The position numbers and the translations under genes are program-made. 64,000 nt of DNA from Bugula neritina (taxonomy: Eukaryota > Animalia > Bryozoa). The stretch covers positions 3,610,507-3,674,506 of the forward strand of contig OZ037767.1 in the NCBI GenBank assembly GCA_964035545.1, in the 5' to 3' direction. A model generated the notes under the pieces. The model saw nothing but the letters and a program-made list of their open reading frames with translations. It was not told the DNA's origin and ran no database searches. Positions 9,901 to 51,663 of this stretch are shown in pieces (positions within the stretch are counted from its first letter, which is position 1; each line of letters begins with the position of its first letter).

Positions 9901-12900
9901 AGGTTATATTTTTATCGCATTTCATTGTATGTTAAGAGAAAAAAAGTTAGACATAGTTGCATGAAGAACAAACAGTATTAACAAGACCTTTAGTGTAGTA
10001 ACAATAGATGTGGCCAAGGAACCAAACCAATATTGTATAATTAGAATTTTACTATATATTACAAGTTTCCTTGTATTTGTTCAGGTTTGGCTTTTCAAGA
10101 CGCAATTGAGAAGATCTTCAACCTATCACCTACAGTTCTAAGAGTAGTTAGGGTATTTAGGGTTGGGCGTGTATTACGTCTCGTAAAATCTGCCAAGGGA
10201 ATAAGAACTTTGCTATTCTCATTACTAGTATCTTTACCTGCTTTGTTTAATATCGGGCTACTACTTTTCCTCGTCATGTTTATCTATGCTACCTTTGGGA
10301 TGGCCTTCTTCGCGAATGTTAAAAAAATGGCTGGCATAGACCAAGTAAGTTGTTTTCTTAAAATTTTTATAATCAAAGTACTATTCTTGATATCAAAGTT
10401 TTTTAGAACAAAGACTAGTAACTAGTAGCTTACTATTTATAGGTTTTGGTGAAATTTCATAGCTGTTTCATTTTCATATAGTTATTAGTACTAAAGTTTG
10501 TTCCTCTCCAAAAACAGCTTTAAATGTCGTGTTTCAAAAAGCTTAAGAACACTTACATTAATAAATTTGACTGCTTAAATAGTTTGCAATCAATTTTCTA
10601 AGATTTCCTACAGGCTGAGACAACGGAAAAAGTGATTTCGCTTTTGATTTTAAAATGTTATTGTGTCTAAATGCTTCACTGCTTGCAATTGTATTTATTT
10701 TTATTTTTGTTAATCAGACATACTTGTTTATCAGATTCATGTACCACATAATTATATACCATTTGATTTTTTATTCTTTTATTAGGTTTTTAATTTTGAG
10801 ACATTTTTCCAAGCATTAATAACGCTGTTTCAATGCACAACATCTGCTGGCTGGAACAACGTCCTGGCTGCCATAACTAATACAGAAGACTGTAAGTTTC
10901 ATCTTAGAAATAGAAATAATGAGTACACAAGTTTGTGAAGCCCCCATTATCTGTTATATCGTTGTTATACTTTCTGTAGACAGTACTGCATTATATTAAA
11001 GCAGTAGATGGGTTGATACAAACATAAAATATGAAATAATTTTTTTCAGTTTTGATAAATTCATTGAATGATGTAATCTCATTACTATGAATTTGAATCT
11101 GCCCCTTTTTGTCTACACTATTTATATTCAAATCATGCAATTTATAAAAGTATACACAAATATGCACACCAATTATATTCACAGAGTTAATTTATTACCT
11201 AAAATTTTCTCAAAAGTATCAGATATTTCGATTTCCAAAGTTGTGTTTTGTTCATGAGAATGCTATAAAGCAGCATTAAACTTATGTACATAAAATATCC
11301 TGTGCAATGTGTATTAGCCTTGGATTGTACGTTCGTACAGGTGTAGAAGATGTGGACTGCGGGAACGCCCCCCTCGGTGTTGCGTATATGGTCACCTATC
11401 TGCTCTTTACCTTCCTTGTCATCATCAACATGTACATTGCAGTCATTCTTGAGAACTTCAGTCAAGCCACTGAAGATGTACAGCAAGGTATGTATGTTTC
11501 TCTAAAGACGTGTTTACAACCTTTTATACAGGCCTTTAAAAAAATCCCTGACACACTTAGTTTATGCAGGATTAAAGTATTCATGTATATGAGTATTCTA
11601 GTTTAAACTTTGCACTTTCAAGTCGTCTCAGCTATTAAGTTGCGTATTTCAGCAGCTAAGAATAACATGCAATGAAAGTCAGCCAAAATAACCATCAGTT
11701 TTGTATTACCACAGATTTTAGAGTCGACTGGAAATGTCATTAGCGAGCATTGGAAGTCCCAAATTAATTCAAGACATGTTCACACAAAAATTAATATAAA
11801 ACCAAATTGTTTGAGCATACAACTCCTAAACAGTCTGTAGATGTCTAGATGATAGCTAAGATATATGTGAATATTTCATCACTGTATAAATAAAATGTTT
11901 TAGTAGCTGTTAGGCTATCTATATCACTGTATATCACTGTTTAGGAGTTGTCTACTCCTAGTTGTTATTCAATTGATGTCTAGAGGTTGTGGACTTTAAC
12001 GGCAGAGTATGATATTTTCTGTGTAGGCATAACGCAAGACGACATTGATATGTACTATGAATTATGGGGAACGTACGACCCTAAAGCTACTAAATACATT
12101 CAAGTAGACAAATTGTTTGATTTGGTTGACGAGTTGGAAGAACCGCTGCGAGTAGCCAAACCCAACTACTTCAGATTAGTCATGACGGACATACCTGTGT
12201 GTAAAGGGGATAAAATACACTGCAGCGATATCCTGGACATGCTTACTCGGCTTTTCCTCAAACAAGATTTTGGTAAGCGAAATATTTCTTGGTAATTACT
12301 ATTTGATGATAAAAGGTCAAAAGTGGGAAAAAACAAATTTCTGTGGGTATACATGTGTGTGCGTGCGCGTGTGTGTGCGTGCGCGTGTGTATATACATTA
12401 TATAAGTTGAAATATATTTCCTAAATTGTTGCAAAGCATATGTTTTTATTTATTGGGTTGTTTTTATGTTGATTATTTGAATATAGCTTAAATTCTTGAA
12501 CATAATGCAACCTAATAAATAGACCATAAGCTATATGTGAGCCATATAAAATATTTATAAGTACTTTTACCTGCATAACGCATAATATCAGTGTGCATAT
12601 TATACCTGCAACTTTAGTTCTAATTATTCAGTATAATGAAATTGCTTTCAGAGCCCGAGAACACAACTCCTGGAGGTAAAAACCGCCACTTGCACTGATT
12701 GCTAGTTATCACCAATATAGCTTATAATTCTAATGATTCCACTGCAGTTGTAGACATTCGTGTTTATATATTATGTATATATACATGATATGTTATATTT
12801 AGATATCATACTTTGTACAAAATGCACCTTGCGTTATGATTTTCCTACTCCTTCTAACATTATAATTCGTAGTCGGTTGTTGTTTGATGTGACTAACTTC

Positions 12901-15328: not shown

Positions 15329-20413
<5,085 letters not shown>

Positions 20414-21700
20414 CCTATACATCGAAAGAATATTAAAAATGCATAAATTTATTACCAGGAATTACAACTCGTAGTATGAAGTTACTTATCAATCTACATA
20501 TTTCACTATGATGTCCTGTCTATACAATCCTATAATCTTTTGTCAGCATTATTTACAATATGTCAGCTATTGTAGACTAGATGTAATTCCTTTGTAAAAG
20601 GGAACTCTGCTCTTTAATTTCACCTTAACTCCTACTTCTGGCTTCAGTTTTGCACTTTGAGTCATGAGACGACAACCACTAACCTTATGTCATTTTTTCT
20701 TACTGATCAGCTCTTAGAAATTGGTAAACACCATAACTTGTTCTAAGAAAAGTTAAGAAAGATGAATCCAAAATCGAAGCGAAATTAGGGAAGTTTATTG
20801 GCCTGTATCAAAATTTATTAGCTTTTAATAATCTTGTTTATGATGATATTATCAACTTGAAGCATATAACATAATTATGTGAACAAAAATTTTCATCAGA
20901 TGTGGTGTTTCAATATGCCAGCAAGTGTACACTTGCATTTTTGCTTTTCATCCATATTACCATAAAACAACCGTATGGTTTATCTAATGAGGTTTTGCCC
21001 ACACAATATTTTAAATGGATGGCAAGTTTATAATTTAGAGAGTTGCACGAAGATGTACAAAAATCGAGGCACATACCAACTGAGCATAGTAGTATGGGAG
21101 ACGATGACCATTTTATCAATGGCCCTCTGGAGGATATCAAATATAGAAGAGCATGGGGTAGGGATAACTTTTCACGACACCTTGCACATACTTTGAATGA
21201 TCTTTTATTTTAAATAACATAACAGAGTTTTGACTTTTTTTCCAATTTTGTTCATGTCTACTTATTACAGTCAATATTCACACTGAATTTAGCAACCGTG
21301 TTTTCATGTCTGTGATATGCAATAAATAATCAAAATCAATCATATACATTGTATTCAGAGGCAAAAAATGCTAATTAAATTATGCTAATTGTTTTTCATA
21401 TAGGCTATAACCTTTGCTATATTCTAACATTAAAATTTGATATAATATAAAAAAGTTTGTTGTACTAGTGGTCTACCTGGGGTTTGCTTGCATGCAAAAT
21501 GGATGTGTGTCAATTTATAGTAACATTTAGTTAGACTTATAAAGTCTTCTATACCTGTTGATGCTGAATAGGAAATTAAATATATAAGATGTTACGTAAT
21601 GAAGTAAGTAAGCTTTCTACTTTTGAATAGCTGGTTTAAAATGCCATATACAGAAATTCAAGTCTTGTCAGCACACTTGTGAATATTATGCTGCCCTAGC

Positions 21701-22076
<376 letters not shown>

Positions 22077-25558: not shown

Positions 25559-27231
25559 TTAATATAAAATTGAAACATTGAGCAACTTTTTCTGATATTT
25601 ATTGAGTTCTTTTACATGAGGAATTTCAGCCAAAGCTAGCTCTACACATGTTGAGTTATTTAGACCACTTTCAGAAAGCAAATATCCATACGATCCTGCA
25701 CCATATGGTCGAAACCTCTGGTCTGGTATTTTACCAGCAGGCAAGGAAGCATTGACACAATCTGTCATCCAGAGATTCTGTAGACGCTTTAACTTAACAA
25801 TCTCTGCATTTATATATTCTTTTTTCAAAGCCAAAATATGTTCTAATTTATTTTTAAAATATTTATACAAAGCAAAGTCAGCTTTGAGAAACTTGTAAAC
25901 AGCAGCACGATTTCCTTCATTATCTTCTGGAAGTAACGAATGATCTGTAGATGGTTGTGCTTTTGTGCCCTTAAAATTTAATTTAAAATACAAAATATCT
26001 ATATTGTTCCATCCCAGCATATCTCTCAGCAAAATCAGACATTCATCAAAATATTCTACTATAATTACAAAATGAAATTGTTTATCTATGCTTTGAATAA
26101 GGTCCTTCACGGCATCATCTTTGTCTGCATTTTTTATGTCTAGTCCAAGATCAAAAGCCTGTGGACTCTTAATAACAACTGCACAGCTTGTTCTTCCAGA
26201 TCTGATGACTTCTAAAAGAGTCGCAGGATCTTGTGAAGGTAAACATCTCTTCATCTGGTAATACTCGAACATAGATTTGAGTTGTGTGAACGGATCTCGG
26301 AGGGATGTAAAATAGAAGCTGTCTTGAGGCATTGTTCTTATCAAATCATCTGATAGCACAGTGTGAAAGCAGAGTACATCTGGTGCGCTAGGGTGCTTTT
26401 TAAGGTTTCTAGCTCTGTTAAACTTTGCAGGCCAACCGAGCTGGTTAAAATTGTCTTTTACGGGAAGAGCAAATGTTAGGTTTCGCTTCATGCCCGCTCT
26501 CATTACGATGTTTTGTAATGTGGAGCTGGCAGCCTTGTGTACTTTTAGATAAACAATGTGACTGCTGTTATATGGTCTGGAATTGAATACAGATTCTCCT
26601 TTCAGCGTTATTTTGGATAATGACTTCGAAGTTACAGAGCTCTTTGGAGAAACTGGGTTTTCTATTTCTTTATTTTTTTCAAGACTTTGTACATTCAAAA
26701 GTTGAAATCTGTTATTAGAACCTGAATAAAATAAACATTTTTTTAATTTACAAAAAGATGTTACGTAACATATATTATTTTATGTACATACCATAATTAT
26801 ATTATGTCACATATCATGTATTACATTGCATATAATATATTGCTTACCTTAATTAAACTACATGTACATGTAATATCGTTTGCCTTATACCCATGCTATA
26901 CTATACATATATAGAAACTAAATGTGTGTATTATTTATATATATAGCTGTTAGTTAAAATTTAGTTATCCCATACATACTATGTACCATACATTGCTTTT
27001 GAAACCATGTATGGTACTCTTGAAACTATAGTCACTTCATACTAATATATAAATAGTACATTATATGTATTACCTATACATGTATGTATTATACTAACCA
27101 ACTTTCGTTCCATATGAGTTAGTTTGAAAATGCACCTGAACTTGGTCACCGTAGTAGAAGATGACCATAGAAACTAATCCAGCTACCACCATCAACGTAA
27201 CGAAAATCTTACTCCATTTCTGACACTTCAT
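25559..27231 (-). CDS. Galactose-3-O-sulfotransferase family protein, paralog B
   Basis: Coding exons 27231-27099 (MKCQKWSKIFVTLMVVAGLVSMVIFYY) and 26721-25559 join in phase 1. Same motifs and the same 1163-nt main exon length as paralog A. A probable 5'UTR exon has its donor at 29155. Confidence 0.93.
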
Positions 27232-29790: not shown

Positions 29791-32700
29791 TCTCACCAAA
29801 ACACTACATAGAAGGCCAGTATTTTAAAAAGCAACACAAAGTTACCATATCAAGCTTTTGCTATAACTAAGCAACATAAATATTACAATGTCTTAAAAAA
29901 TATTTTTATATATCATTAGCTAAAATAGTTTTAATTGAATATTCATTTGGACTCACCCTGAGCCCCTGCAATGTTGAAAGTTACACTTACGCATCTTCCA
30001 TAGTTTGAAATTACTTAATCTTAAACTGAAACAACTTTTTATATTGCATTATTGTTTTTAAAACATTCAAATGATTAACTCTGTATGTATTATTCAAAAG
30101 TTTAGGTTAGATGCCAATAAACTTACAAAATGAGCACTCTACAGTAGCATACTGCAGTATAATAATATTTTGGAATATTTTTTATTCAAGTTTGATTTAA
30201 ACTCCAATAATGTAGAACAATGTAAGCTAGGTATTGCTAAGCAACTTAATCTGTATAGTATTTTTTTTCTATAGGTACAATTAGTTGTAAACTTACCCAT
30301 TTTCTTTGATTTCCCAGAGCCAGTAGAAAAAATATCTAATAGTTCAATATAAAATCAATATTCAAATAAATTAATAGATATTGCATTTTGTAGTTTTTGA
30401 TGCTTCAGTCAAAATGCAATGTTGTCCACTTTGAAAACATTAATTGTGCATAGGCCACATGTAAGCATACACTTCATGTAATGCACAAGTAATATAATTT
30501 TAATTGCTTACGATTCCATTGCTTGAATGAATTGCTGTTTCTATTGTTTGGATCTATAGTGCAGGTTAAATTCCACAACGCATGCAAGCAATGGAACCAT
30601 GGTGTAAGGCAAGCATACTATACTGACAGATATACTACATGAAATGTTAAATAAAGCTAATTGCTTCTTATTACATTTTAATGCTGCATTATACTGCAGT
30701 AATTCTTGCATACATAACTCATTGTGCTGGGTTGATGACTCAGAATGTCTGCAAGTAATAAACTGGTCTCACTCTGGTAATTGCCGTCTGTTTTATTGCA
30801 TTGACTACAGAATTATAGCGTGTGGTGCAACAATATTTTGTGCCTATAACAATTTATGTCCCATTATAGTATATTCACTAGCAGCATAATGTGGAAGGAA
30901 TTAATTAGACTTGAAACTTGTTAGCAACAGTGTTAGTAGCTTGGTAAACCCAATTTCAATAGCTAAATCCTATTGGCGATGTCAGGGCTTCTTTGCCCGC
31001 AATAAATTTTTTTAGTCTCGCATGCCTAAGTTATTGTTGAAATAATACATTAATTTATTGTTACAATCAAATTTCTAGCACAAACATGCAGCTCATCATT
31101 ATGCAGCCTGTAAACTACCTTACATAAGAATTGTTTAATTGTAGTATGACATAAAATTAATTCATCCCACGGAACAAGTTATATTTTTACCAATGAGATA
31201 ACATAAGCTTTGCTGCAATTTTTCGAAGTCATCTTTTTTGTGAAGCTGCTTTCTAATATAATATATTAATATAGCAAGCCAATTAGGCAACATGTGATTT
31301 AATTGAATGAAATTTTGTTAACAATAAATTATTGGGCACCTGCTAACTATAATAAAAAAAAAATTTCGACCCAATATTTTCAATATTTGATGAAATTCAC
31401 ATAATTATTCTGATAATTCTAAGATTTCTGTGTTTTGGCCTTATAACCATGTCTAACATTTCTAACTCTAAAGAACATATAATATTAAATAAATTAGAAA
31501 AAAAATTGATCAATGTTTCAAGTTGATATTATTAGTCCTTGACCTACAAAATGAAGAGAAGGTGGTTATAGGTGTTGTGTGTCTCCGATGGTCATGGTAA
31601 AAGTAGCACTGTGATTCGGAGCTAACACTTGTGTAAAGGAATAATAATACACGGCTGCCTCCCACACATCTATCTTGTTTTGCCTACTCTTCTCAATACG
31701 ATTCATTGCTCCAGCAGCTAGCTCGTCAAAGTTAAGCAAAGTACAGTATATAATGTAGAATTGTAAGATTCAACAGCTTAATGCTTTGTAATATATTTAT
31801 AATAGTTGGTTTGTTTGGCGCAGTAAAAGTTTTAATGTATATTTTTACATATTGATGTGTTATTATTTTCTATAAAAACTACTCTTAAATAAAAACATGA
31901 AAAGTTTAATATGTGAAAGCATTTTTGTGATTAGTCAAGGCACAGCATGAAAAATAAATAATATAATATAGGCTTCTTCACAACTTGATAAAAAACTCTA
32001 CATGCATAATAGTAATAAATAGAAAGAATATTTATGTATCATATAAGCCAAGCTTAAAACCAATTTTGTGCTAAGAAAAGTAACAAGTGTTAAAATATTT
32101 TGAGCAAATTATTGATTTAATATTTGAGTTAAACGTATAATAGTCATGCAAATGTTTTTTGTTCTAATTTTACTAAGGTAGGTATATACAAACAAACTGT
32201 AAGTCAAAAGATATATAATTGGATTGTTGAGAGAAAATTTTTGTGGTAGAAATAGTAGAAAAGTATTCCGGGAAGCTTATGTTTGCATTTATACATAACT
32301 ATAGCAATTTTTTTCAAATATTGAAAATATTCAAAATCGGCAGCTCAAAGATAGCGTTTAACATTTCGTATAGTTGTTTTCAACAAATTAATACACACTT
32401 TAAACATAAACACAATTATTTTATGCAATATTTGAGCAAGATAAAACATATCTATGAATTCAATAAAAAAAGAGAAAGCAAATTTTGTGAAAATAAAAAA
32501 AATAACTTTTCGTAAACAAAATGAAATAATGTATAATATATTTTTATTTATAGTTGTCATTTTCCCGTAACTTTCAACAATTTAGCAAATAATAGCCTCT
32601 GATACTTAGCTACAAGGCCCGGCTTTAAGAGAGTAGTTATAGATCTTGTTTCTATGTAAAATGTTGTCCTGAGAACCACTTGTCTCCGTTGGCTGTGGCT

Positions 32701-33034
32701 CTGTATAAGAACTAGCCTCACTTGAAGCTCTTCTACTTTCTTCTGAAATAAGACAGGCCTTATTATAGCAACCATGCACCGGAGATTGGCTTTCGGTTGA
32801 AAGAGAGGATATGGATGAAATTGACATGTATGAAACATTTTAAATTTACCTTTTTTGTGCATCAAAAAATAATTTAAATACAAATTGTTAGTAGGTGATA
32901 ACTAACTTTCACAATCGCTATTTGAGCTTTGTACATGTGCATATCCATTGTCTTTTGGAGTTTGCATGTCTATATAGCCATTATCATCTACATCACAAAT
33001 GTTACAAGAACAATTATATATATGTGGGGGTGTG

Positions 33035-33160
33035 CGAGCCGGTGAGTTAATTTTACACTGTGTACGTTTCCAGATTCCTTAACACTCACCACTGTGCATG
33101 AATGATAGAATCCAATATGCTTAACTTGTTTTTGGGCAACTTTTAAAGAAGAATAATTTT
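33035..33160. repeat. Dispersed repeat of about 120 bp, copy 1 (copy 2 at about 34693-34817)
   Basis: Shared core ccagattccttaacactcaccactgtgcatg...tagaatc...tttgggcaactttta in two introns of the VFT gene. Confidence 0.75.
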
Positions 33161-33296
33161 ACACAAATTAACATTCTATCACTTACTGCCAGGTATGGTT
33201 GTTGAGGGATTGTTAGCCAGGGGCGCTACTGCGTCTTGGTGGTTGTTGACATTCATATAAAATTCGTTGTTTCTGCCTGCTGTATATACTGAATAC

Positions 33297-33326
33297 ATAT
33301 ATATACACACACACACACACATATAT

Positions 33327-33409
<83 letters not shown>
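33297..33409. repeat. (CA)n/(TA)n compound microsatellite
   Basis: Direct reading. Confidence 0.9.
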
Positions 33410-33410
<1 letters not shown>

Positions 33411-36400
33411 CTATGAACCGTTTAAAATCAAGTAATTTTAAATAAAACATATTTATTCACTATATATAGCAAAAAAGAAAACTTGTAGAAAAATAATAAA
33501 CTGGGCCAAATAAATTAGTAGCATGAAATTGCTTTATAGGCCTACCGCAGCTAAACTTTTCAGTCAGCAGTTTTTTATGTCATTCATACAAAATTTAGTT
33601 ACCACAAATATGCTAGTATTTGATGTAATTACAGCTTGTAGGTAGGAGTGTTTTCCTTTATTGAAGTTTTGTCACCGTAAATGGTAACTAACCTTGATAG
33701 CTGCTGTTTAAACCGGTTAAATTGGGAGAATTGTTGTCAGTTTGATTTTGAAAAACCTGCATGCTTTGTGTAAATTCGTCATAATCGCCTTCATCTAAAC
33801 AGTGTGGTATAAGAGTAAATTTAGTACAAATATAATACTGTAATAATAAACGTAATTTGATATATTTTTCAAGTGTTGTATGTAAACAAAATGCTACTAT
33901 TTGCAAAGTAAATTGACTTAATCACATGTGATACTGCAACAATAGGCCCTTATTTTCAGATGTCCCAAGTATCCTCTTTACAATTACGAGTTGTGTTCTT
34001 TCAAAGTAAATAGGTTGAACCTTTGTATAAAAAACAAACTCATCAAAAACTTGAAGTTTGGCTGTTTCTTAAAATTCTAATTATGCCATATAATTGTTCT
34101 TTTAGGAGATAGATATTTTGGTATAAGCACACATATTAGCAGTTCAAAAATCTTTGAAAAATGTTTCTCCATGAAACATTTTAAAAGAAATAAACTTGAA
34201 AGCAGATTTGTGGTTTTGGTTGCCAAGCAATGCTGAAGTGGCACTTCAGCATTTCTCAGCAACTAAGACCACAAACATGTGCCCAAGTATAATTTGTTCA
34301 ACAATTTACTTTTTGGGAGGACACAATTCTTAATTGTAAAGGGGATCTTGGAAACTTCTCAAAAGGCTCTATTAGACAAAGGTCTGCTGACACATTGCAG
34401 TTGATGGCCTTAGAGGTTCTATACGGGTGTGTAAGAGGTACTTGTTCTAACTGCACTAGTTGGTTACTGGCCTTAAACCTACATGCAAGTTAACATAACG
34501 AAGCCTGTCTTCCAAAAATATGCTTTTGTGATCTGCTTCTTTCTGTAGGAAAGATCCCACAAGACCATATATTCATAAGCTACTGATGGAAACTGGGCCG
34601 TACTAAACCTATTAAAAGCAATTGATCATGTGATGCCACTGATTTGTGCAAAACAAAGAAAAACCAACACGATGCACTTCAGAGCTACAACTCGAGCTGG
34701 TAGGTTGACCTTACACTGTGTAAACCTCCAGATTCCTTAACACTCACCACTGTGCATGGATAATAGAATCAACTATTTTCAACGTCTTTTGGGCAACTTT
34801 TAGACAAGGATAATTTTATATAATATACTTATATATGCATATACATATAAAGTATATACTTATATATGTATACATGCATGTATATATGTATATATATATG
34901 TTGATGGATGTATATATGTGTGGTATATGTAAATATAAGTAATAATAGAAGGCAATTATTTTTATGGGTAAGTATAATAATGAAATATATACGCACAATC
35001 TGTGTCAAACATTTGTGTGCATAAAACATGGCTATGCAAAACTGTTTTTATTTGCCTGTATAATGCTTTTTACCTTTACAATTTTCATCTTGCTAAAATT
35101 ATTGCGAATTTTTAGAAGTGAGTGCATTGTAAAGCCAAAGTATAAAATTATACTTGCATAAACTTACTAAAAATAATTTTTTTATAATTTGATATTGTTC
35201 TGTCATATTAATAACAAAAAAATTGTTAATAACAGACTTCTATAAATATCAATTTCTACAGTAATTTTCATTTAATCGCCTAAACCTTTGAATATTGACA
35301 AAGACTTCGATATAAATTTACCAAATAAATTTTCAGTAATTCACTTTTTAGAATTGTCACTATAATTATTCATTACAATGTTTAAAATAGTCAATCTAAA
35401 AATAGGCTACCTAATAAAACTGAATACCACAATATTTCAATAGGTTATAGATAGTAATAAATTTACCACGAGTTGCTTCTTTCCTGTTTCTTTTAGCCTT
35501 CTTTATAAGCTTTGCTTAGCCGAAGTTCACAATTATAGCAAGACCAATTACAAGCATTACAATGACTATAGCAAGGATAGCACGCCCAACTTTGCTATCA
35601 AATTCATGCAAATTTTTTTCAATTAGTTCATCAGCAGTGATTGCTGGTGTGCTGGAAGTTACAATGCTAGGAGCGAAGCTTAGAATGTTTTCAGGACACT
35701 CTTTGCAGTTCACGCTTAGTGTACAATCAAATAGTACTAGTTTTTCATCGTCAATCTGCTCCGAATGATAAAAAAGGGGTTGCCGAGAAATTTCAAACAA
35801 GCCTTCGTCAATACGATACAAAAGTACATACTCTGCATTGTAGCTGTCGTTTTTTATGATGTTGAACACGTCATAGGTGGCAGGTCCCTGATTGTTTCCC
35901 GAATTGAAAACTCTTATATTTGGAACACCGGTAATGCCATTTGAAGGTATTAAAACTTTTTTCATCAAATTAAAAAATGTTTGACGAGAGGGTAGCCCTG
36001 AATTAAAAATTACATTAAAGTCTTCACTTATTTCTTGCTTAGCTTCCTTAACTGAATAAGCTAACGAAAGCCAACCAAGAGTGACCAACTTTGCAAATAC
36101 ATCTTCCGTGTCCAGTGGTGCTGATGCTGTACACTTAGCATTATTTGAAACTAAGTTACACTCCGGATGGCATTCTCTGCTCGCTGTTTTTCCATGACTC
36201 ATTGGGAGATTGCAGCCAAAATGCTGCTGCCAAAAATTTTTAAACAAAATGCTGTGTGCTCCATTAAAAACACTAATGTTGGACAAAAACTTTTCAAACT
36301 GATTTCCTTTATCTGTATGCCAAGAAAACTCTGTTTTCAATGACATGGTTATGAAACCAAATGTGACATCTTCAACTGGTTTAATCAGTTCATAGGATTT

Positions 36401-37884
36401 ACCCCATGTTTTGCTGCCAATAATCATTCTACCCTTACTCTTCCAAATTGAATTACGATCTCGAATCTGTGTGAGAAGCTGGGGAATAACTCTTTCATCT
36501 CCAAAGAAAATGTAAGCACGCGGCCAACTTTGATTTCTGGCCATTTCAATTGCCACATTGATCAAGGAGTTTTGAGTTCGATCAATTTCTCTTTTAACTT
36601 CAATGCAAACTCCGTAATTTTGAGCATTTTCTCTTATTAATCGAGCTCCAGATTTGCCGTAAACAGAACTTGTGTATATCAGTCCCACCGATTTGATGTC
36701 GTTCATCTGGCAGATTTTTAAAATATTGTGCACTTGATTTGTGTCGGATGGTGTTAGGCGTAACAGTAGCGGATATTGTTCCGTGTTGTCCAGCCAATGA
36801 CTTGTACTGCCTGGACTTATTTGTGGAATATTTAGATGGCGGAAATAACTTTGTATTGCTATGGTTACAGCACTGCTTATATCACCAATTATCAACAAAA
36901 TGAAGTTCTCCAGTGGGATTGTATGTGAGGTGCCATTTACATCAATTACCTCTGCTTTGTCATTGCCAAAGATTTCATTTAGTACTTTGTAAGTGTGAAG
37001 TTCTGCAGAGCAAGTGTCAATAAACAATGTCCCAACATCTAGCTCATTATTCAATATCTGATTGAATAAATGTTTTCCATAATCAAATGCCAAAGCACGG
37101 GTCATACCAGATCCTGTAATAGTGTTTGAACACCCTTTGTAGTTTTCCCCAATATCCCTTATAGTGCCAGTGCCTAGAAAAAAGTTACAAAAACTTTAGC
37201 ATTAGAACGCCTTTAACTTTTAACCTTTTCATCATCAACAAACAAATTCTTATTTAAGACCTGGTATTGTTTGTTACAAAATAAACAGAAGAAAAAGTTT
37301 TAACTATTTTCAGACTAGCAGTCAAAATGTATAGAATCAATTTTCTTAATATATTTCTTGTGTAAACTAATTTTTATTTTTTAGACGCTTTATAATTAAT
37401 GGGTTTTATAATGCTTAAACTGTACAGATAAATAAAATTATGTATGCTCTAATATTTTTATGCAAAATAATGCTATAGTTTATAAATTCTTTTCTAACCT
37501 ATAACCACATATTTACTCTTTCCAGGAGTATATACATAATGTAAATTTCTAGGAGTACAATGCTGACAATCGTTTTCACATCTGGACTTGATTGAGGTAG
37601 TGTAGTTGAAAAGACTTTTGGTGGAACCGTTTTCAAAATGCACATTTATCTACAATAAACAATTTGCCAATTTTGGATAAATTTGAAATTATTCTGCTAA
37701 TTTTTTTTTAAACTACATTACATAAAACACAAAATTAATAAGAAAATTATGACATCTAAAATGAAATATTGCAATACTATTAGATGACTGTATTTTGCAT
37801 GTTACTATAAGCTATATTACATATTTTTAGAAACACAATTTTCATAAACATTGCATAATTGCCCTTTGATTGTACTCATGTTCA

Positions 37885-38338
37885 TTAAAGTTGCGTTTAT
37901 ACCTCTGCTGAAAAAAGTACCGAGTTTAAGTTAATAATGCTGGTCCGGGTACCCCTTTATAGTCAAACTGAAACTCGTTGAAATCATATTGATGCGGTTG
38001 CTCGCTTTCTGAAATTGAAATTTGACTCGCATAATAGCTATTTGATGCCCTTTGTAAACGTCGTGAATTAGTGAAGCGGAAAGCATAAAAGCGATAATTG
38101 AGAAGGCGTAGGCTATATAATTATAATCGTATAAGTACGTTGTCTGATCGCCAAAGTAATGACTAAATAACGATGTTTACATGGAATTATTACTCCTATT
38201 CTAAAATTGGCCGATTAAGTTATCACAGTACAAAAATTTCAACGAGTGGCTTTTACAATGCAATGCAACTCGGAGAAATTCCAACCCGGCCAAATTGAAT
38301 TTTTGACCGAAAATCGTGAAGGTATAAACGCAACTTAA
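37885..38338. mobile_element. Non-autonomous DNA transposon (MITE) with TTAA flanks, Kolobok- or piggyBac-like
   Basis: TIRs agttgcgtttatacct / aggtataaacgcaact; TTAA at 37885-37888 and 38335-38338. Confidence 0.75.
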
Positions 38339-40624
38339 GCTATTATGTTTTTTACAAATTTTACAATTTATTTTAGCTTTTTACCTCTACATACTCTAAA
38401 TGTTGACTGTTGGTAGTTTTATTCAAAACAGCCAATTTCAAGCTCTGCTCATTGATGCCAAAGTCAAAGTCACCTCCAGAGCTGAAGAAACTACCATTTC
38501 CATCCATTTTAGCAGTGGTCAAGGGACTATTGGTAAACAAATCGTTTGCCAGCACTTTTCCTTGCTTTTCATAGTTTTCTTTGAAAAGCACTAAAAGCAT
38601 ATGCAGTGCTTTCTGCGTTGCCAATAAATTATCGAACTGAATAGAATCGGGTTTACAATATGGCTGACAATAGCTCAGTGTCCTGGTCAGCCATGATGGC
38701 TGTTTTTGACTTGTTTTTAAGACATCCTGCACATATTTCTTAATGTTTTCTAATGACCCTGTATTTTGGTAGTTTGGTAAAAGCGTCATAATAGTCAAAA
38801 GAGAGCTTCCTTTTTGCTTTATGACCTGTTCTTGCGTCCTTTTATGCCACAATGATTGTCCGATAGCTGTTGGTAAAATTATGGTTTTTTCAAACAGTTC
38901 ACTGTCTAGTGTGTTATAATATGTTTGAACCAGAATTTGTGCTACAAAAAGTCAGACAAATATTACATTGAAGTGCGTTTGGTTTAGTAGAAAAAAAAAG
39001 CTTAAAATGCCAATAAACATAAAATAAGCATTTCATTTGCTACAGAATAACATATTTAGCATGGCTAAAGGAGGACGCAGCATAAAATTTGGGACTACTA
39101 ATGAGACCCCAAACCCAGGGTCCCCTCTCCCAACTCTTGCATTTAGTGACCCCAAACTTTGTGCTGCATCAAACAATTTTCTAACCGAAATCCCTTATCC
39201 TTGTCATTAGCCTAAAAAATTATAACAGCTTGCAAAGTAAATGGCTACTCTTTATTCACGCTAGTGATCAATATCTATTCAATATGTTTCTGGAAATTTT
39301 TAGTTTGACTTTACCTGGCTCTTCAAGTCCATAATATAAAATCACTTTTGCTTCATCAATTGCCGTAACATTATTAACCAACTCTATGGAATAGTCGATG
39401 TCTTTTATTCTTAAAGTGTCAATTTGCAAGGTAATTGCTGTACATATACTCCATATTCCTGTATTTAAAACAAACAGTTATGGTTCACTTGAGACTTCTA
39501 ATGCATAGAATTTATATGCTTATTTCACTAGCACAACACTGTTAAATAAAAATAGTTAAGATTATTGCCTTTCGCAAACCAAATGTTTCTGAATCTGTAT
39601 TAGATGATACATGAGTGTAAAGGCATGTAAATTTAATAGTGCCAATTTAAAAAATTACTATTATTCAATGAGTTACCTGCGCAAATTTCTCCATACTTTT
39701 CAGTCCTTCTCTCCCATAACTATCATTTGTGTACAGAAAAATAACATAACTCCAATTATTTTGCACAGCCCATGACAGCATAGTCTAAATATTAAGAATT
39801 GGATCGAGTTTATACATATATATGCAATAAAGCAGGAACTTAAATTTTAATAAGCTTCAAAAATCCCAAACTAATTAAACAAACATTGCTCAGCAAAAAA
39901 ACTTTTTAACATAAATTCATTTCAATATTTACAACTATTGAAGCATTTTTTGGGAATCATGAAAATGAATAGAAACACCCATGCAGTGTTTATAGCAACC
40001 TAAAGAAATAGCTATATTTATTATTTCATTAGGCATTTTATGCATCGTCAGTGATAAAATGGGCATTTTCTCATGTTTCTAAAGCTATTTTCTTAAAAAA
40101 AACATATAGTTTTTTGTGAAAGACCTTGACCTTGATTTCCAAGTCTGCTAAGACGCCAGTTCCGAAAAAGCTGTTAATTGATTGATCCAGTACTAGTGAT
40201 GGTGAATTAGTAGTTATGCTAATCAGCGGTACTGTAACTCCACCAAGCATATTTTTCAACAGTCTTGTATTATCATTACCCATAGCTGTTACCAAACCTG
40301 TTAGTACAAATTTGGATCAAAGTTTCTAGCTCACTAACTGCATGTAGTTGCAGCACACTATAAACAAAACCAGAGTTTCCACATATAAATGCGATGATAT
40401 AACTAATGAGAAAATAGTTTAAAGAGCAATAGAAAAACATATTTTTGAAAGTCCTTTGTTTTTCTAATTTTAACGAAAGTAATGCTCGGTACAGTCTAGA
40501 CTCTAGATTATCATATTCTACACCTAATTAAGATGGACAGTGTACTCAAAATAATAAATTTTAGCTATTATTTATCCATGCATGATGAATTTAAAGGACA
40601 CAGATTTTCTCCTCCCATAGCTTA

Positions 40625-40880
40625 AGGCCTCATTCACGCTTGTCGTATTGTAGGCCGTAACAGCAAATATCAGCTATTTTTACATATGTCTGAGCTTCCT
40701 GTACGACGTTTCAGTACGTTAGAATCAAGCACTGCTTGATTTAAACAAATTACAGCGGGCTGCTATTGGACAAAAATACTTTTGCGTCGACTCATTGAAA
40801 ATAATTGTCTAATGCCCGGACACATTAGAAATGGTTGATATTTTACGTTACGGCCTACGGTACGGCAAGTGTGAATGAAG
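40625..40880. mobile_element. MITE with imperfect TIRs of about 50 bp
   Basis: tcattcacgcttgtcgtattgtaggccgtaac...aaatatcagctattt is complementary to aaatggttgatatttt...gttacggcctacggtacggcaagtgtgaatga. Confidence 0.75.
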
Positions 40881-41315
40881 AGAAAATTAAATTTTCTAAA
40901 AGTTAGATCATCACCTAATTTTACATAAATAGTAGAGATTATTAAGCCTCATACAATGTTTTGAAATTTATTTTTTTTAAATTACAATGGAGTACAATGG
41001 TATATGCACCTACCGATTGGAAGTTCATGAGAATTTGTTTCATTCACACGAAAATCAAAGAGGGGAATTGTTAGAGAGTCGGTGACATATTTAGTAGCCA
41101 GTGTCTTATTCAGACAGCTATCAGCTGCCTCCAGTTCTGTAATATAGCTACATTTTAAACATGAAAAAAAGAAAAAAAAATATATGTATTGTGTATATAC
41201 AATGCACATGAAACTAGTAGCAATAAAGTGTTTTAAATCAAATTTTATTGTTCATTACTTTTATTTACTCTGCTCTGCACTGCATTGAGCTCTCTTTAGC
41301 GGTAAACTATACACC

Positions 41316-41395
<80 letters not shown>

Positions 41396-41396
<1 letters not shown>

Positions 41397-41481
41397 TTCC
41401 CTAATGTTGCTATATTGCCTGAACAACTGCGGCACAACTAACATATCAATATAGGCGTGTGTGCGTGTGTTATTGAAGAAG

Positions 41482-41572
<91 letters not shown>

Positions 41573-41661
41573 TATCTTCCTCAATAACACACGCACACAC
41601 ACCTATATTGATATGTTATTTGTGCCCCAGTTGCTAAGGCAATATAGCAACATCAGGGAAG
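41396..41661. mobile_element. Foldback/MITE element: inverted arms of about 85 bp around a (TA)n core, TA-flanked
   Basis: cttccctaatgttgctatattgcct...gtgtgttattgaagaaga (TA)n tcttcctcaataacacac...aggcaatatagcaacatcagggaag. Confidence 0.85.
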
Positions 41662-43645
41662 TATGATCATTATTACTTTGTATAGTAGTAAGTTTGGGTT
41701 ATATAGAGTCATACAAGGAAGTTGTATTGTTGTGCTGCATATAAACACAGTACAGTGTATTACAACATACCTTCGCATATGTGTTTTGACATAAAGCTTG
41801 TAGTTTAAACTACGACATAATAATATATAAAGGATCTTTTATAGAGTTATGTAACAGAGATTTTGTCAATTTTATAAGGCAGCAATTTCACTATAAGTTC
41901 TAGCGTGACTTCATATAGTAGGCATCAAGTAAAAAAGAGTTGAAAGAGAATAGATGTATATGATAGCCTAAGAACCTACCGTATGATACCCCTGGTACTG
42001 CGAGACCCTCATAATCACTTCCATTCACTTGAGTTTGTTCTAATATGTACTGTGCAGCAAGAATATGGGCAATGTTTGTCATAGATATCTCGGCTGGAGC
42101 ATGACATGTTGGTGACTGGGTCAGTTCAGCTATAAACACTATCTTTGCTGTGATGTTGGCTGGGAAATAGAAAATAATTAAAATGTTAGCAATTATAGTC
42201 TGAGCAAAATAGGCATATAACAAATAGTATTATTACATAATTTCTTTGCTATGCATATATGTATTAATAAGTTACATATTGAACCCCATTAGCAGGTCTA
42301 AATAATAGGCTATATTTGATACTGTATGCTTTGCTTTCCTAACATTTGTTTGAAAGACCAGCAATTCAAAGTATATAATATTTTTACATGTAGTGACGAC
42401 AGTGAACCTGTTTGGACTTTACATAAGCTGGGAAAGCTTTTCCATAATGCATGATAGCTTTTCACATATCATCTCAGCTATGCCAGCTATATTATGCTTT
42501 TTCCACATCTACTATATAGCTACTACGCAAAAGCTAATCTTTTTGACTAATAAAAAACCCAGCATTTTTCACTTATCCATACTGGCGTCTCACACTTGTA
42601 ACTTGCAACTTATAACTTATGATATAACCTTTTTCACATTGCTATTTTCTTTCAGTCTGTGACAATAAATATTTCTATATACATAAAACACAACAGAGCC
42701 AATGTACTTTTATAGTGTGACATCAACATTTGTTGTTGCTGCATGCATATCACTTGTAAAAAAATAAAATATGTCTATCTATAAGATAGGAAACCAATTT
42801 CAATTTATTTCATTTTTAAAATTCTCTGCATAGAATTCTATGCTATAAACCTCTAGCAAACTGCTAAGGGTTTATGAAATAAGGTTTCCAGCCAAAGAAA
42901 AACTGCTAAGTCATACACTGCATAAAAATTCCAAGCTTCCTGGAAAGAAAATTGTTATGCAATGTTTGCAAACACCTATACATGTAATGTAACCACACCC
43001 AGAAATTCGTTTACATAATGTGTTGACCAGAGAAATGGAAACGCAGCCATGGAAACGCAGAGCTGTAATAGAACATGCTAACCTTGAATTCATATATGAC
43101 CCAGAATCTGCAAATGCTATACATATATAATTTTAAACAAATGTTTTCAAATGAAATTATTAGAAATATCAGTGTATGCAACTTGTAACTTTTAAAATGT
43201 TGAATCATGAATTTAATCTTAATTTATATTAGTCAAATTCAACATTATTTTAAGCTTTTAAAGCACAAAAATGCTCCAGTCTATAATAATGAGGAAAATA
43301 ATGTGAAAGAAACTTTATCTCACCCCTAGCACATGTCTTATTATAGATGTGATATATAGGCATGGTAAGTGTGATAAAATAGTGATGTGACCGAAAGTGT
43401 GATATTATAATCACATATAAATACTATATCCTATTAGACTTATAATATCACACCAGTATCATACCGATAGCATGCTTATATAACACCGGTATTGTTCTTA
43501 TACCACACCAACAACACCAACATTACATAACCTATTCCATTATGAAACAACGGACTTAGTATTTGGATAATTATAGTAGACCTTAGACGGCTTCATCAAC
43601 ACAAAAGTGCACGTGAGTAAAATTTGTGATAAGAAAACCAAATCT

Positions 43646-43826
43646 AGTGACATGTAGATAGGCTACTTTTACCTGCTCTAATGACATTTAGATAGACTAC
43701 TTTTACCTGCTCTATAGTGACATGTAGATAGACTACTTTTACCTGCTCTATAGTGACATGTAGATAGACTACTTTTACCTGCTCTATAAGTGACATGTAG
43801 ATAGACTACTTTTACCTGCTCTAATG
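43646..43826. repeat. 34-37 bp minisatellite, 5 units, spanning the exon 1 / intron 1 junction of the VFT gene
   Basis: Unit agtgacatgtagatagactacttttacctgctctat; each unit reads CAG|GTAAAA on the minus strand. Confidence 0.92.
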
Positions 43827-44264
43827 ATTGATAGAGTGAATAGAATACAGGAGAGAATATTTAGTAGTCTACCCATCTCAAATGATTTTAGCAAACTGGT
43901 TTCAAGGACTTGCATAGTAGTCATGTAATACTGTAAGCTCAAAGGCACTTAAGTTTTGGCTGTTTGTTTATGTGGCTAACTTGAGCTAATATCTATATAT
44001 TTGCTTATTATTAGCATATAAAATAGATGAAACTAAAATTATATTGTAAAACAAGGAAGTATTTGCTAACATAAAAGGTATTTATACAGCTGCCTATTGA
44101 AATAATTCACGTCACACTTACGATAATTATATAATTATATTAGTGAAATGTTTTGATACACTGTGTTTGGTTTCTTAAAAATTCCCTTTAACATTTTTCT
44201 AAATTAGTCAGCTTTGTGTCAAAAAACTAATAATTTTGTTTGGAAGTTGAAAGCAATATAATAC

Positions 44265-49908: not shown

Positions 49909-50118
49909 GCAGCAGTGGTCTAGGGGTTATAGCGTTTGCTTAGTAAACACTAAGTTATGGGTTCGAGCCTAGACAGAGGCCATTGGTGATGTTAGGAACA
50001 GCATATAGTCATAATTTCTCCCGTGCCTCATCTGAATAAGTCCTTATATAGCTGCTTTAAGAAAAAACCTTTTAATCAGGAGGTTCTCACAGGGATAGCG
50101 ACTATAAACTTGCGTGAG
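49909..50118 (+). mobile_element. tRNA-derived SINE, near full length
   Basis: TGGTCTAGGGG ... GGTTCGAGCC; colinear with the 47967 copy. Confidence 0.85.
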
Positions 50119-50176
50119 TTTATAGAAATACTTATCCAGTTGAGCACAATATGGTATCAGATCTTTAGAATATGTG

Positions 50177-50880
<704 letters not shown>

Positions 50881-50978
50881 GTTGTGTGCGAGCACTGTAT
50901 TTACCATCAATCTTCATGTTTGCTAAAAAGATGCATTGTTTGTAGTGTACAGAGCTGTTTTAGTTACAAAGCCAAACC

Positions 50979-51663
50979 ATGAATAGACTACTTTTTTCTC
51001 CAGTCACTCGCAATATTCTAGCTAGAAAAGTTTCACAGATAACTCCTCTAAGCTTCATTTCATCTGGAAAACTTCGACTTGATGAAGAGAAATTGTAAGT
51101 ATGACAACTCCAACTTTATAGCTTATAACATGCAGTTTGTGTGACAACTCCAAACCATTGGCTATAATGACTTGTAAAAAGTAAGACAACTCCAATATGC
51201 TTCTACCATTATTGAGGTTCTGCTAGGAAGATATGACAACTTTTAAATAGATAATAATATAATGACAATGCAAATATATATCAATAGTTGTTTTTCAATT
51301 AAATTTAAAATTTTGTTAGCTGTTTTTTGTGTTGCATAATATAATAGAATCAACTAGTGAAGTTACTTTTGAGTATTTTTATCTGCAAAAACAACAAAAA
51401 AGCTTCAATTATTAATATGACACTAGCATACAGTTTGCAGTAAAGTTTCAATTATTATCCAACAGAAAAGGAGCTCAATGGACAGATGATGCTAAAGTAG
51501 TGATAATTGGAGGGGGGTGTGTCGGCACGTCCCTAGCTTACCATTTAGCCAAGAAAGGGGTCAAGGACGTTGTGCTGTTAGAAAAGAGTGAGTTGACTGC
51601 AGGCTCCACTTGGCATGCGGTAAGACACCTTCCAAAACCAAGTATACAAAACAATTCAATTCA

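What the first reader, a model, noticed from the sequence alone, without database searches (positions are those of the whole stretch)
32606..43876. Tandem Venus-flytrap single-pass receptor with a phosphotyrosine-docking tail and no 7TM, cyclase or kinase
Seen: splicing gives signal peptide - VFT1 - SRCENDCQHC - VFT2 - DCTLSVNCKEC - Ser/Thr/Pro stalk - one TM - basic stop-transfer KLIKKAKRNRK - a low-complexity tail of about 185 aa built from small phase-1 exons. The tail carries Tyr motifs, several preceded by acidic residues: EGDYDEF, NEFYMNV, DNGYIDM, DNGYAHV, (VSYMSI), SSYTEP, KIYNYSL. Established: VFT domains usually couple to 7TM (class C GPCR), ion channel (iGluR), guanylyl cyclase or Tyr kinase (Venus kinase receptor) modules; YxxM binds PI3K p85 SH2 and YxN binds Grb2 SH2. 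Inference: this is a non-catalytic, tyrosine-phosphorylated small-molecule receptor that signals by recruiting SH2 proteins. I do not recognise this architecture as described, but I cannot exclude that it is known.
Basis: partly seen in the sequence, partly recalled or inferred. Interest (0 to 1): 0.85.

Follow-up and report, generated by a model that had tools for sequence, protein, structure and literature searches.

The report
Broken tandem Venus-flytrap single-pass receptor gene
This bryozoan gene belongs to a real family I could not find described, found in molluscs, brachiopods and bryozoans: membrane receptors with two stacked nutrient-sensor-type domains, one membrane helix and a tyrosine-motif tail. 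This copy has a stop codon right after the membrane helix, so its tail is probably not made.

Summary
The architecture is real. On the minus strand there is a signal peptide, a divergent first Venus-flytrap (VFT) domain in seven exons, and a well-conserved mGluR-type second VFT. After each VFT comes a three-cysteine linker, then one TM helix and four small phase-1 tail exons. I found no 7TM, kinase or cyclase domain.

It is one member of a large family. Homologues of 1000-1800 aa in many molluscs, Lingula and Watersipora carry two ANF_receptor domains, one TM helix and a disordered tail. All are annotated as uncharacterised, and I found no paper on them. This scan had already noted the same architecture at seven other places in this genome.

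- **This copy looks damaged.** An in-frame TAA (35518-35516) lies between the TM helix and the basic stop-transfer sequence, and DNA contigs of a public run show the same TAA. The exon 5/6 junction is also one nucleotide out of phase. This is probably a young pseudogene or a tail-less allele.
- **The conserved motif is different.** Across 34 family tails YxxP is enriched (46 observed, 24 expected), mostly next to the membrane. YxxM and YxN are not. That points to Crk/Nck/Abl-type SH2 docking, as in DCBLD1/2, not PI3K or Grb2.

No RNA data exist for this organism, so splicing and tail use are untested.

The parts
43816..43876 (-). Exon 1: ATG and signal peptide (MGRLLNILSCILFTLSIIRA), donor CAG|GTAAAA, phase 1
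41980..42159 (-). Exon 2: start of VFT1, phase 1 in and out
   Evidence: Family profile positions 34-90, E 0.004. blastp to Watersipora P0166 and P0004 residues 36-86, E 6e-8 and 1e-6.
41014..41136 (-). Exon 3: VFT1, phase 1 in and out
   Evidence: tblastn with P0004 residues 87-109; splice sites
40131..40297 (-). Exon 4: VFT1 lobe 1. The usual Ser and Arg ligand-contact positions are not conserved. Phase 1 in, 0 out.
   Evidence: Family profile positions 132-191, E 0.003
39677..39784 (-). Exon 5: VFT1 (..WSYVIFLYTNDSYGREG..), phase 0 in and out
   Evidence: Profile E 3e-8. blastp E 8e-9 to P0004 residues 192-223.
39315..39458 (-). Exon 6: VFT1 (GIWSICTAI.. corresponds to GICF in homologues). 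The acceptor is phase 1 and so does not match the phase-0 donor of exon 5. This may be a frameshifting lesion.
38385..38941 (-). Exon 7: divergent second half of VFT1, 185 open codons
   Evidence: Weak but colinear profile match at positions 308-533. The chance of staying open at this base composition is about 3e-7 (my calculation).
37499..37649 (-). Exon 8: end of VFT1 and the Cys linker SRCENDCQHC (C-x3-C-x2-C)
   Evidence: Profile E 4.6e-5. blastp E 8e-8 to paralogue L002.
35467..37173 (-). Exon 9: VFT2, Cys linker DCTLSVNCKEC, stalk, TM helix, TAA, basic stretch AKLIKKAKRNRKEATR, donor GTG|GTAAAT
35516..35518 (-). In-frame TAA stop codon directly after the TM helix
   Evidence: The identical sequence is in a DNA contig of run X1. 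Of the four large-exon paralogues, this is the only one with a stop inside the profile match.
33693..33794 (-). Tail exon A (holds DYDEF), phase 1 in and out
33187..33279 (-). Tail exon B (holds FYMNV). Alternative in-phase acceptors lie at 33288 and 33276.
32907..32987 (-). Tail exon C (holds GYIDM and GYAHV), phase 1 in and out
32606..32742 (-). Tail exon D (holds SSYTEPQ and IYNYSL) and the stop codon. A stronger acceptor at 32789 would give another frame.
   Evidence: SSYTEPQPTE resembles PSYVEPQSVE of Watersipora P0004.

Best explanation
The locus is a copy of an uncharacterised family of type-I membrane receptors found in molluscs, brachiopods and bryozoans.

**What the family looks like (shown here).** A signal peptide is followed by two class-C-GPCR-type Venus-flytrap domains in tandem. 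Each VFT is followed by a three-cysteine linker. Then come a short stalk, one TM helix and a disordered tail. The tail's one conserved feature is a YxxP motif, usually 10-26 residues after the helix. Many mollusc tails also end in a PDZ-ligand-like sequence such as -ISRV.

**How it most likely works (inferred).** A small ligand closes the conserved membrane-proximal VFT2. VFT2 keeps the mGluR Ser and Thr backbone contacts, and most family members keep the acidic S-E-x-W-G position. Closure re-orients a receptor dimer. Cytosolic Src- or Abl-type kinases then phosphorylate the YxxP tyrosines, which recruit Crk/Nck/Abl-type SH2 adaptors. This would resemble the YxxP scaffold receptors DCBLD1 and DCBLD2.

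**This copy (shown).** It carries an in-frame TAA directly after the TM helix and a one-nucleotide phase mismatch between exons 5 and 6. As written it encodes at best a tail-less ectodomain anchored in the membrane. It is most likely a young pseudogene or a null allele, because its long exons and tail exons are still open.
For: **The family.**
- An HMMER search of 1.8 billion representative proteins with exon 9 gave 1153 hits. Dozens of them are 1000-1800 aa and match in two stretches, the second at about residues 570-1000.
- Pfam finds two ANF_receptor domains and nothing else in the 15 full-length members tested.
- A hydropathy scan finds a single TM helix at about residues 985-1070 in more than 30 of them.
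- The sources are Pecten, Aplysia, Lymnaea, Haliotis, Patella, Solemya, Saccostrea, unionids, Lingula and Watersipora. Nearly all are named 'uncharacterized'.
- Two contigs, of 5152 and 4249 nt, carry uninterrupted ORFs of 1480 and 1246 aa. They look like assembled mRNAs.
- An AlphaFold model of Watersipora P0166 (pLDDT 81.8, pTM 0.71) shows two alpha/beta modules, a TM helix at 1039-1068 and a tail with pLDDT about 30. Each module matches mGluR ligand-binding domains (target-normalised TM-score 0.83). No solved chain covers both modules.

**The tail.**
- Across 34 tails YxxP occurs 46 times against 23.9 expected, and 0 of 500 shuffles reach that count.
- Yx[DE]P occurs 13 times against 2.5 expected, and Y[ILV]xP 23 times against 3.6.
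- One alignment column shortly after the TM helix has Y in 28 of 39 sequences, with P at +3 in 26.
- YETP is found in three bryozoan tails.
- Phospho-YxxP is the Crk/CrkL SH2 consensus and is ancient (PMC5043372). DCBLD1/2 signal in this way (PMC6029619).

**This copy.**
- The TAA is identical in DNA contigs of about 94x depth.
- The family profile keeps aligning past the stop, to window position 35474. The three other large-exon paralogues have no stop.
- The phase mismatch is documented.
Against: - No RNA data exist, so no splice junction or tail usage is verified.
- Run X1 may come from the same individual as the assembly. Its contigs hide minor alleles, so the TAA could be one allele of a polymorphism.
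- The exon 5/6 mismatch rests on my choice of canonical splice sites.
- The YxxP enrichment was computed on related sequences and is not proof of phosphorylation. No kinase, SH2 binding or ligand was tested.
- The window's own tail has only one YxxP (YTEP).
- Its VFT2 has Lys where at least 90% of the family has Glu (S-K-T-W-G). The two closest homologues share this Lys, so ligand chemistry may differ in this subgroup.
- Three paralogues in this genome appear to have short tails without YxxP. Docking is therefore not universal in the family.
Confidence: 0.6

Rival explanations
1. The gene is intact and works. The TAA would be an individual polymorphism, an error or a read-through site. The full protein of about 1200 aa would then signal through phosphorylated YMNV (Grb2) and YIDM (PI3K p85).
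For: All four tail exons are open, phase-compatible and have good splice sites. The basic stop-transfer sequence and a strong donor follow the TAA in frame. The large exons 7 and 9 are still open.
Against: A DNA contig at about 94x depth shows the same TAA, with no variant listed. TAA is generally the least leaky stop codon (my knowledge). A second defect, the phase mismatch, lies in VFT1. YxxM and YxN are at chance level in 34 family tails and are not seen in the bryozoan homologue tails I read.
Confidence: 0.12
2. The family does not signal through phosphotyrosine. The tandem VFT ectodomain would act as a ligand sink, a co-receptor or an adhesion and scaffold partner, like the clearance receptor NPR-C or an auxiliary subunit. 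The tail would serve trafficking and PDZ anchoring. Tail-less copies such as this one could then still work.
For: Many mollusc tails end in -ISRV or a similar S/T-x-V/I sequence. Several family members have tails of only 18-60 aa. Paralogues L003 and L004 end 30-45 aa after the TM helix within the same exon, with no YxxP exon in the 6 kb downstream. NPR-C is a precedent for a VFT with one TM helix and a short non-catalytic tail (my knowledge).
Against: The juxtamembrane YxxP is kept in 26-28 of 39 otherwise unalignable tails, including very short ones such as P0063, P0096, P0122 and P0130. Anchoring alone does not explain that.
Confidence: 0.25
3. The tandem arrangement is an artefact: two neighbouring single-VFT genes, or a VFT gene and a fragment, wrongly joined.
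For: Some long hits are clearly fused models of vertebrate receptor gene arrays, such as the 3171-aa Polypterus 'CASR' entry. VFT1 of the window is weakly conserved, and its single exons give no Pfam hit.
Against: The same layout of two VFTs and one TM helix at about residue 1000-1060 recurs in more than 30 proteins from three phyla. No TM helix or signal peptide lies between the VFTs. mRNA-like contigs carry the whole ORF. All window junctions except exon 5/6 are phase-compatible. In paralogues L002-L004 the end of VFT1 and all of VFT2 lie in one open exon.
Confidence: 0.03

Closest known systems
Class C GPCRs (mGluR, CaSR, GPRC6A)
   Same: The VFT is of this type. VFT2 matches mGluR4 at E 1.7e-21 and keeps the Ser, Thr and Tyr-Gly ligand-contact motifs. 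The homologue model superposes on the mGluR5 and mGluR1 ligand-binding domains at TM 0.83. After the family itself, the next hits are GPRC6A.
   Different: There is no NCD3G nine-cysteine domain and no 7tm_3 domain. There are two VFTs instead of one, a single TM helix and a three-cysteine linker instead.
Venus kinase receptors (VKR)
   Same: An invertebrate single-pass receptor with a class-C-type VFT ectodomain (PMC2680970, PMC3703292).
   Different: VKR has one VFT and an insulin-receptor-like tyrosine kinase domain. Here there are two VFTs and no kinase.
Natriuretic peptide clearance receptor NPR-C (NPR3) and receptor guanylyl cyclases
   Same: An ANF_receptor ectodomain, one TM helix and, in NPR-C, a short non-catalytic tail. 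The protein-atlas search ranks an NPR3 cluster third by features.
   Different: These have a single VFT of the NPR subtype that binds peptides. They have no tandem arrangement and no YxxP tail. The cyclases also have kinase-homology and cyclase domains.
DCBLD1 and DCBLD2 (and the p130Cas substrate domain)
   Same: Non-catalytic single-pass scaffold receptors. Their tails carry conserved YxxP motifs, which Src-family kinases and Abl phosphorylate and which then bind the CRK/CRKL SH2 domain (PMC6029619, PMC5043372). This is the closest functional analogue.
   Different: The ectodomain is unrelated (CUB, LCCL, discoidin). They are vertebrate families. Binding is shown there and only inferred here.
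Bacterial BvgS and EvgS sensor kinases
   Same: Two VFT domains in tandem outside the membrane, followed by one TM segment (PMC4352136).
   Different: Those VFTs are of a different periplasmic-binding-protein type. A cytoplasmic PAS domain and a histidine kinase follow. There is no homology beyond the general fold.

Membership tests
Class C GPCR | N-terminal VFT (ANF_receptor) domain | tested here: met
   Pfam PF01094 E 1.5e-30 on exon 9; mGluR4 E 1.7e-21
Class C GPCR | Nine-cysteine domain (NCD3G) between the VFT and the membrane | tested here: not met
   No PF07562 hit in the window exons or in the 15 full-length family members scanned. Only a C-x5-C-x2-C linker is present.
Class C GPCR | Seven-helix 7tm_3 domain | tested here: not met
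   There is one hydrophobic helix. The whole-genome PF00003 search has no match within about 16 Mb on this contig. There are no domain hits in the 6 kb downstream.
Venus kinase receptor | Intracellular tyrosine kinase domain after a single TM helix | tested here: not met
   No kinase Pfam hit in the two largest tail-exon ORFs of the window, in the downstream ORFs or in homologue tails of up to 750 aa
Receptor guanylyl cyclase / NPR | Kinase-homology and guanylate cyclase domains (or, for NPR-C, a single NPR-type VFT with a 37-aa tail) | tested here: not met
   No cyclase or kinase-homology domain. The VFT is of class C GPCR type and is duplicated.
Ionotropic glutamate receptor | Ligand-gated channel pore domain (Lig_chan) after two clamshell domains | tested here: not met
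   No Lig_chan hit; single TM helix
Tandem-VFT single-pass family (no description found; defined here) | Two ANF_receptor-type VFTs in one chain | tested here: met
   VFT2 is met outright. VFT1 is met through colinear exon matches to the family profile and to Watersipora proteins. VFT1 is divergent and has a phase break at exon 5/6.
Tandem-VFT single-pass family (no description found; defined here) | Three-cysteine linker after each VFT | tested here: met
   SRCENDCQHC and DCTLSVNCKEC. The cysteines sit in invariant or near-invariant columns of alignments A1 and A2.
Tandem-VFT single-pass family (no description found; defined here) | Single TM helix about 30-50 residues after VFT2 | tested here: met
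Tandem-VFT single-pass family (no description found; defined here) | Cytoplasmic tail with a YxxP motif | tested here: inconclusive
   The tail exons hold YTEP, and DYDEF sits at the juxtamembrane position. They lie behind the TAA, and no RNA is available.
YxxP scaffold receptors (work-alike of DCBLD1/2) | Phosphorylation-dependent binding of a Crk/CrkL-type SH2 domain to tail YxxP | not testable with these tools
   Only motif statistics are available. The precedent is in PMC6029619.

The most novel reading that the evidence does not exclude
Molluscs, brachiopods and bryozoans may have an undescribed receptor class. In it an amino-acid-type Venus-flytrap sensor, duplicated in tandem, would signal through one TM helix directly to Crk/Nck-type SH2 adaptors by way of conserved juxtamembrane YxxP tyrosines, with no G protein, channel or enzyme domain. 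That would be a fourth output mode for class-C-type VFT sensors.
Probability: 0.35. Interest if true: 0.75.

Novelty: new variant of a known kind. Interest (0 to 1): 0.5.

Why it matters
VFT sensors are known to drive 7TM domains, ion channels, cyclases and tyrosine kinases. A conserved, multi-phylum family that joins two VFTs to a bare YxxP docking tail would add a non-catalytic output. It would also give orphan chemosensory or nutrient receptors in molluscs, brachiopods and bryozoans a testable signalling route.

For genome annotation, these proteins are currently 'uncharacterized' or mislabelled as 'metabotropic glutamate receptor'. The broken copy here shows that the family is turning over in this bryozoan.

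Tried and rejected
- **RNA evidence.** The run search found one holder only. Its contigs are unspliced DNA, so no junction could be tested.
- **Pfam on single VFT1 exons.** No hits. Support came only from a family profile I built.
- **Joined protein.** I did not build a joined (spliced or repaired) protein or send one to any tool. All searches were exon by exon, by reference. So there was no whole-protein Pfam scan, TM prediction or fold of the window's own product. A Watersipora homologue (P0166) was folded instead.
- **Tail exons of paralogues.** I looked for YxxP tail exons in the 6 kb downstream of three in-genome paralogues and found nothing convincing.
- **Ways around the TAA.** The only GT upstream that could pair with a nearby AG would make a 21-nt intron, too short for an animal. 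Other GT sites cut through the TM helix.
- **Exon 5/6.** No alternative acceptor or donor restores the frame.
- **Literature.** Four searches for a eukaryotic tandem-VFT single-pass receptor returned only VKR, class C GPCR and bacterial BvgS/EvgS papers.
- **Gene fusion.** Rejected as an artefact; see the rival explanations.

Full report
**Setting.** The window is AT-rich animal DNA (about 31-33% GC) with spliceosomal introns and many microsatellites. Earlier notes of this scan call the genome a bryozoan. That fits my results: the best full-length relatives are Watersipora subatra proteins, and the closest exon-level relative comes from a metagenome sample labelled BRYA16. The window is G000:C3:3610507-3674506.

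**The observation.**
- On the minus strand, a 559-codon open frame (37195-35519) holds an ANF_receptor domain (Pfam E 1.5e-30). It matches the mGluR4, mGluR8 and mGluR7 ligand-binding domains at E about 1e-21.
- This frame ends in DCTLSVNCKEC, a short stalk and one hydrophobic helix.
- Upstream exons give no Pfam hit on their own.
- A profile I built from 25 family members matches those exons in colinear order. tblastn and blastp with Watersipora proteins agree.
- So a first, much more divergent VFT is present, ending in SRCENDCQHC.
- I placed canonical GT-AG sites for 13 exons. All junctions are phase-compatible except one.

**Two defects.**
- *The stop codon.* The TM helix (..IIVNFG) is followed at once by an in-frame TAA (35518-35516). 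After it come AKLIKKAKRNRKEATR in the same frame and a strong donor.
  - Contigs of the only public run that holds this stretch are unspliced DNA at about 94x depth. One 3185-nt contig covers 34729-37913 with no difference.
  - So the stop is not an assembly slip, although the run may come from the same animal as the assembly.
  - A profile search of the whole genome finds four large-exon paralogues. Only this one has a stop inside the match, and the match continues past the stop to window position 35474.
- *The phase mismatch.* Exon 5 ends at CAG|GTAACT in phase 0. The only acceptor that gives the homologous frame of exon 6 (GIWSICTAI, matching GICF in relatives) is phase 1.
  - The summed exon length is 3611 nt, which is not a multiple of three.
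- The long exons and the four tail exons are still open. At this base composition a 185-codon open frame has a chance of about 3e-7 (my calculation). The damage therefore looks recent.
- The tail would be about 153 aa. VSYMSI lies upstream of any usable acceptor.

**The joined protein was not built.** Every search used single exons by reference.

**No 7TM or enzyme domain.**
- There is no 7tm_3, NCD3G, kinase or cyclase hit in the window exons tested or in homologues.
- The genome's 7tm_3 matches lie elsewhere. The nearest on this contig is at 20.26 Mb.
- Downstream of the last exon there are only short ORFs without domains, up to a Gal-3-O-sulfotransferase gene.

**The family.**
- Searching 1.8 billion representative proteins with exon 9 gave 1153 hits.
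- Dozens of them are 1000-1800 aa with two matched stretches.
- All 15 that I scanned have two ANF_receptor domains and nothing else.
- A hydropathy scan shows one TM helix at about residue 985-1070, followed by 18-750 residues of low-complexity tail.
- They come from gastropods, bivalves, the brachiopod Lingula and the bryozoan Watersipora. They are named 'uncharacterized', 'Receptor ligand binding region domain-containing protein' or, wrongly, 'metabotropic glutamate receptor'.
- Two contigs of 4-5 kb carry the whole ORF uninterrupted. For a multi-exon gene family that suggests assembled mRNA.
- An AlphaFold model of Watersipora P0166, made with the family alignment, has pLDDT 81.8 and pTM 0.71.
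  - It shows two alpha/beta clamshells, a disordered stalk, a TM helix at 1039-1068 and a tail with pLDDT about 30.
  - Foldseek matches each clamshell to mGluR or CaSR ligand-binding domains (target-normalised TM-score up to 0.83). No solved chain covers both (query-normalised TM-score at most 0.35).
- This scan's notebook lists seven other first-reader notes of the same architecture elsewhere in this genome. My own search found paralogues on C1 and C2.

**The tail motifs.**
- In 34 family tails YxxP occurs 46 times against 23.9 expected from within-tail shuffles, and 0 of 500 shuffles reach that count.
- Yx[DE]P occurs 13 times against 2.5 expected, and Y[ILV]xP 23 times against 3.6.
- In the 39-sequence alignment, one column about 40 columns after the TM helix has Y in 28 sequences, with P at +3 in 26.
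- Bryozoan tails carry YETP (P0004, P0166, and the last coding stretch of contig L007). P0004 has PSYVEPQSVE where the window has SSYTEPQPTE.
- In the window DYDEF sits at the juxtamembrane position, with F at +3.
- Phospho-YxxP is the consensus of the Crk/CrkL SH2 domain and predates animals (PMC5043372). The single-pass scaffold receptors DCBLD1 and DCBLD2 use tail YxxP sites, phosphorylated by Src-family kinases and Abl, to bind CRKL (PMC6029619).
- From my own knowledge, YDEP-like sites fit Nck and Y-[VIL]-x-P sites fit the C-terminal SH2 domain of PLC-gamma.
- Many mollusc tails end in -ISRV or a similar PDZ-ligand-like sequence.
- The shuffles do not correct for relatedness of the sequences, and nothing here shows phosphorylation.

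**The ligand side.**
- VFT2 keeps the mGluR Ser (..ISS..) and Thr (..GSTS..) positions and the YG motif.
- The family's near-invariant S-E-x-W-G, which resembles the CaSR position, is S-K-T-W-G in the window. Its two closest relatives, P0001 and P0002, also have Lys there.
- This looks like a subgroup-specific change of ligand chemistry rather than decay.
- VFT1 of the window has lost the usual contact residues.

**Verdict.**
- The architecture and the absence of a 7TM or enzyme domain are confirmed.
- The family is widespread and I could not find it described in the literature I could search.
- The phosphotyrosine-docking idea is plausible for the family, but through YxxP and not through the PI3K and Grb2 motifs.
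- This particular copy is most likely a recently broken or tail-less allele.

Noticed in passing
window 43645-43823: A 36-nt unit is repeated five times directly after exon 1. Each copy repeats the exon 1 splice donor (AGAGCAG|GTAAAAGT), so intron 1 starts with five tandem donor sites. Only the first keeps the frame open.
   Followed up: partly
window 36418-36432 (GSKTWG in exon 9): VFT2 has Lys at the family's near-invariant Glu of S-E-x-W-G, the acidic ligand-contact position of class C VFTs. The two closest homologues, P0001 and P0002, share the Lys. This suggests a subgroup with a different ligand.
   Followed up: partly
homologue tails (P0032, P0035, P0036, P0066, P0067, P0076, P0167-P0169, P0245): Mollusc family members from bivalves and abalone end in the same -(K/R)ISRV C-terminus, a class I PDZ-ligand-like sequence. 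The bryozoan members do not.
   Followed up: no
window 15332-16435 and 25562-26698 (minus strand): Two intronless paralogous Gal-3-O-sulfotransferase genes (Pfam E 4e-49 and 2e-50). Between them lie retroelement-like ORFs (17640-19996) and very long (CA)n tracts (16465-17447, 21658-22074).
   Followed up: partly
window 33972-34340 and 37836-38000: Intron segments with very high word depth in run X1 (about 3,000-9,000 and over 100,000, against about 90 around them). These are high-copy dispersed repeats inside the gene's introns.
   Followed up: no
G000:C2:15669583-15703710: A cluster of at least three multi-exon VFT paralogues in tandem, some with stops inside the matches. Together with the pair at C1:2641455 and C1:2652954, this shows that the family is expanded and turning over in this genome.
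   Followed up: no
window 10087-10425 (plus strand): An ORF with a voltage-sensor S4 pattern ([25 protein letters not shown]). It belongs to the sodium-channel gene that other readers noted upstream in this window.
   Followed up: no
window 50023-50982: About 900 nt of a perfect 12-nt microsatellite. It reads CLSV or RQTD repeats in open frames on both strands and produces spurious ORFs of 250-320 aa.
   Followed up: no
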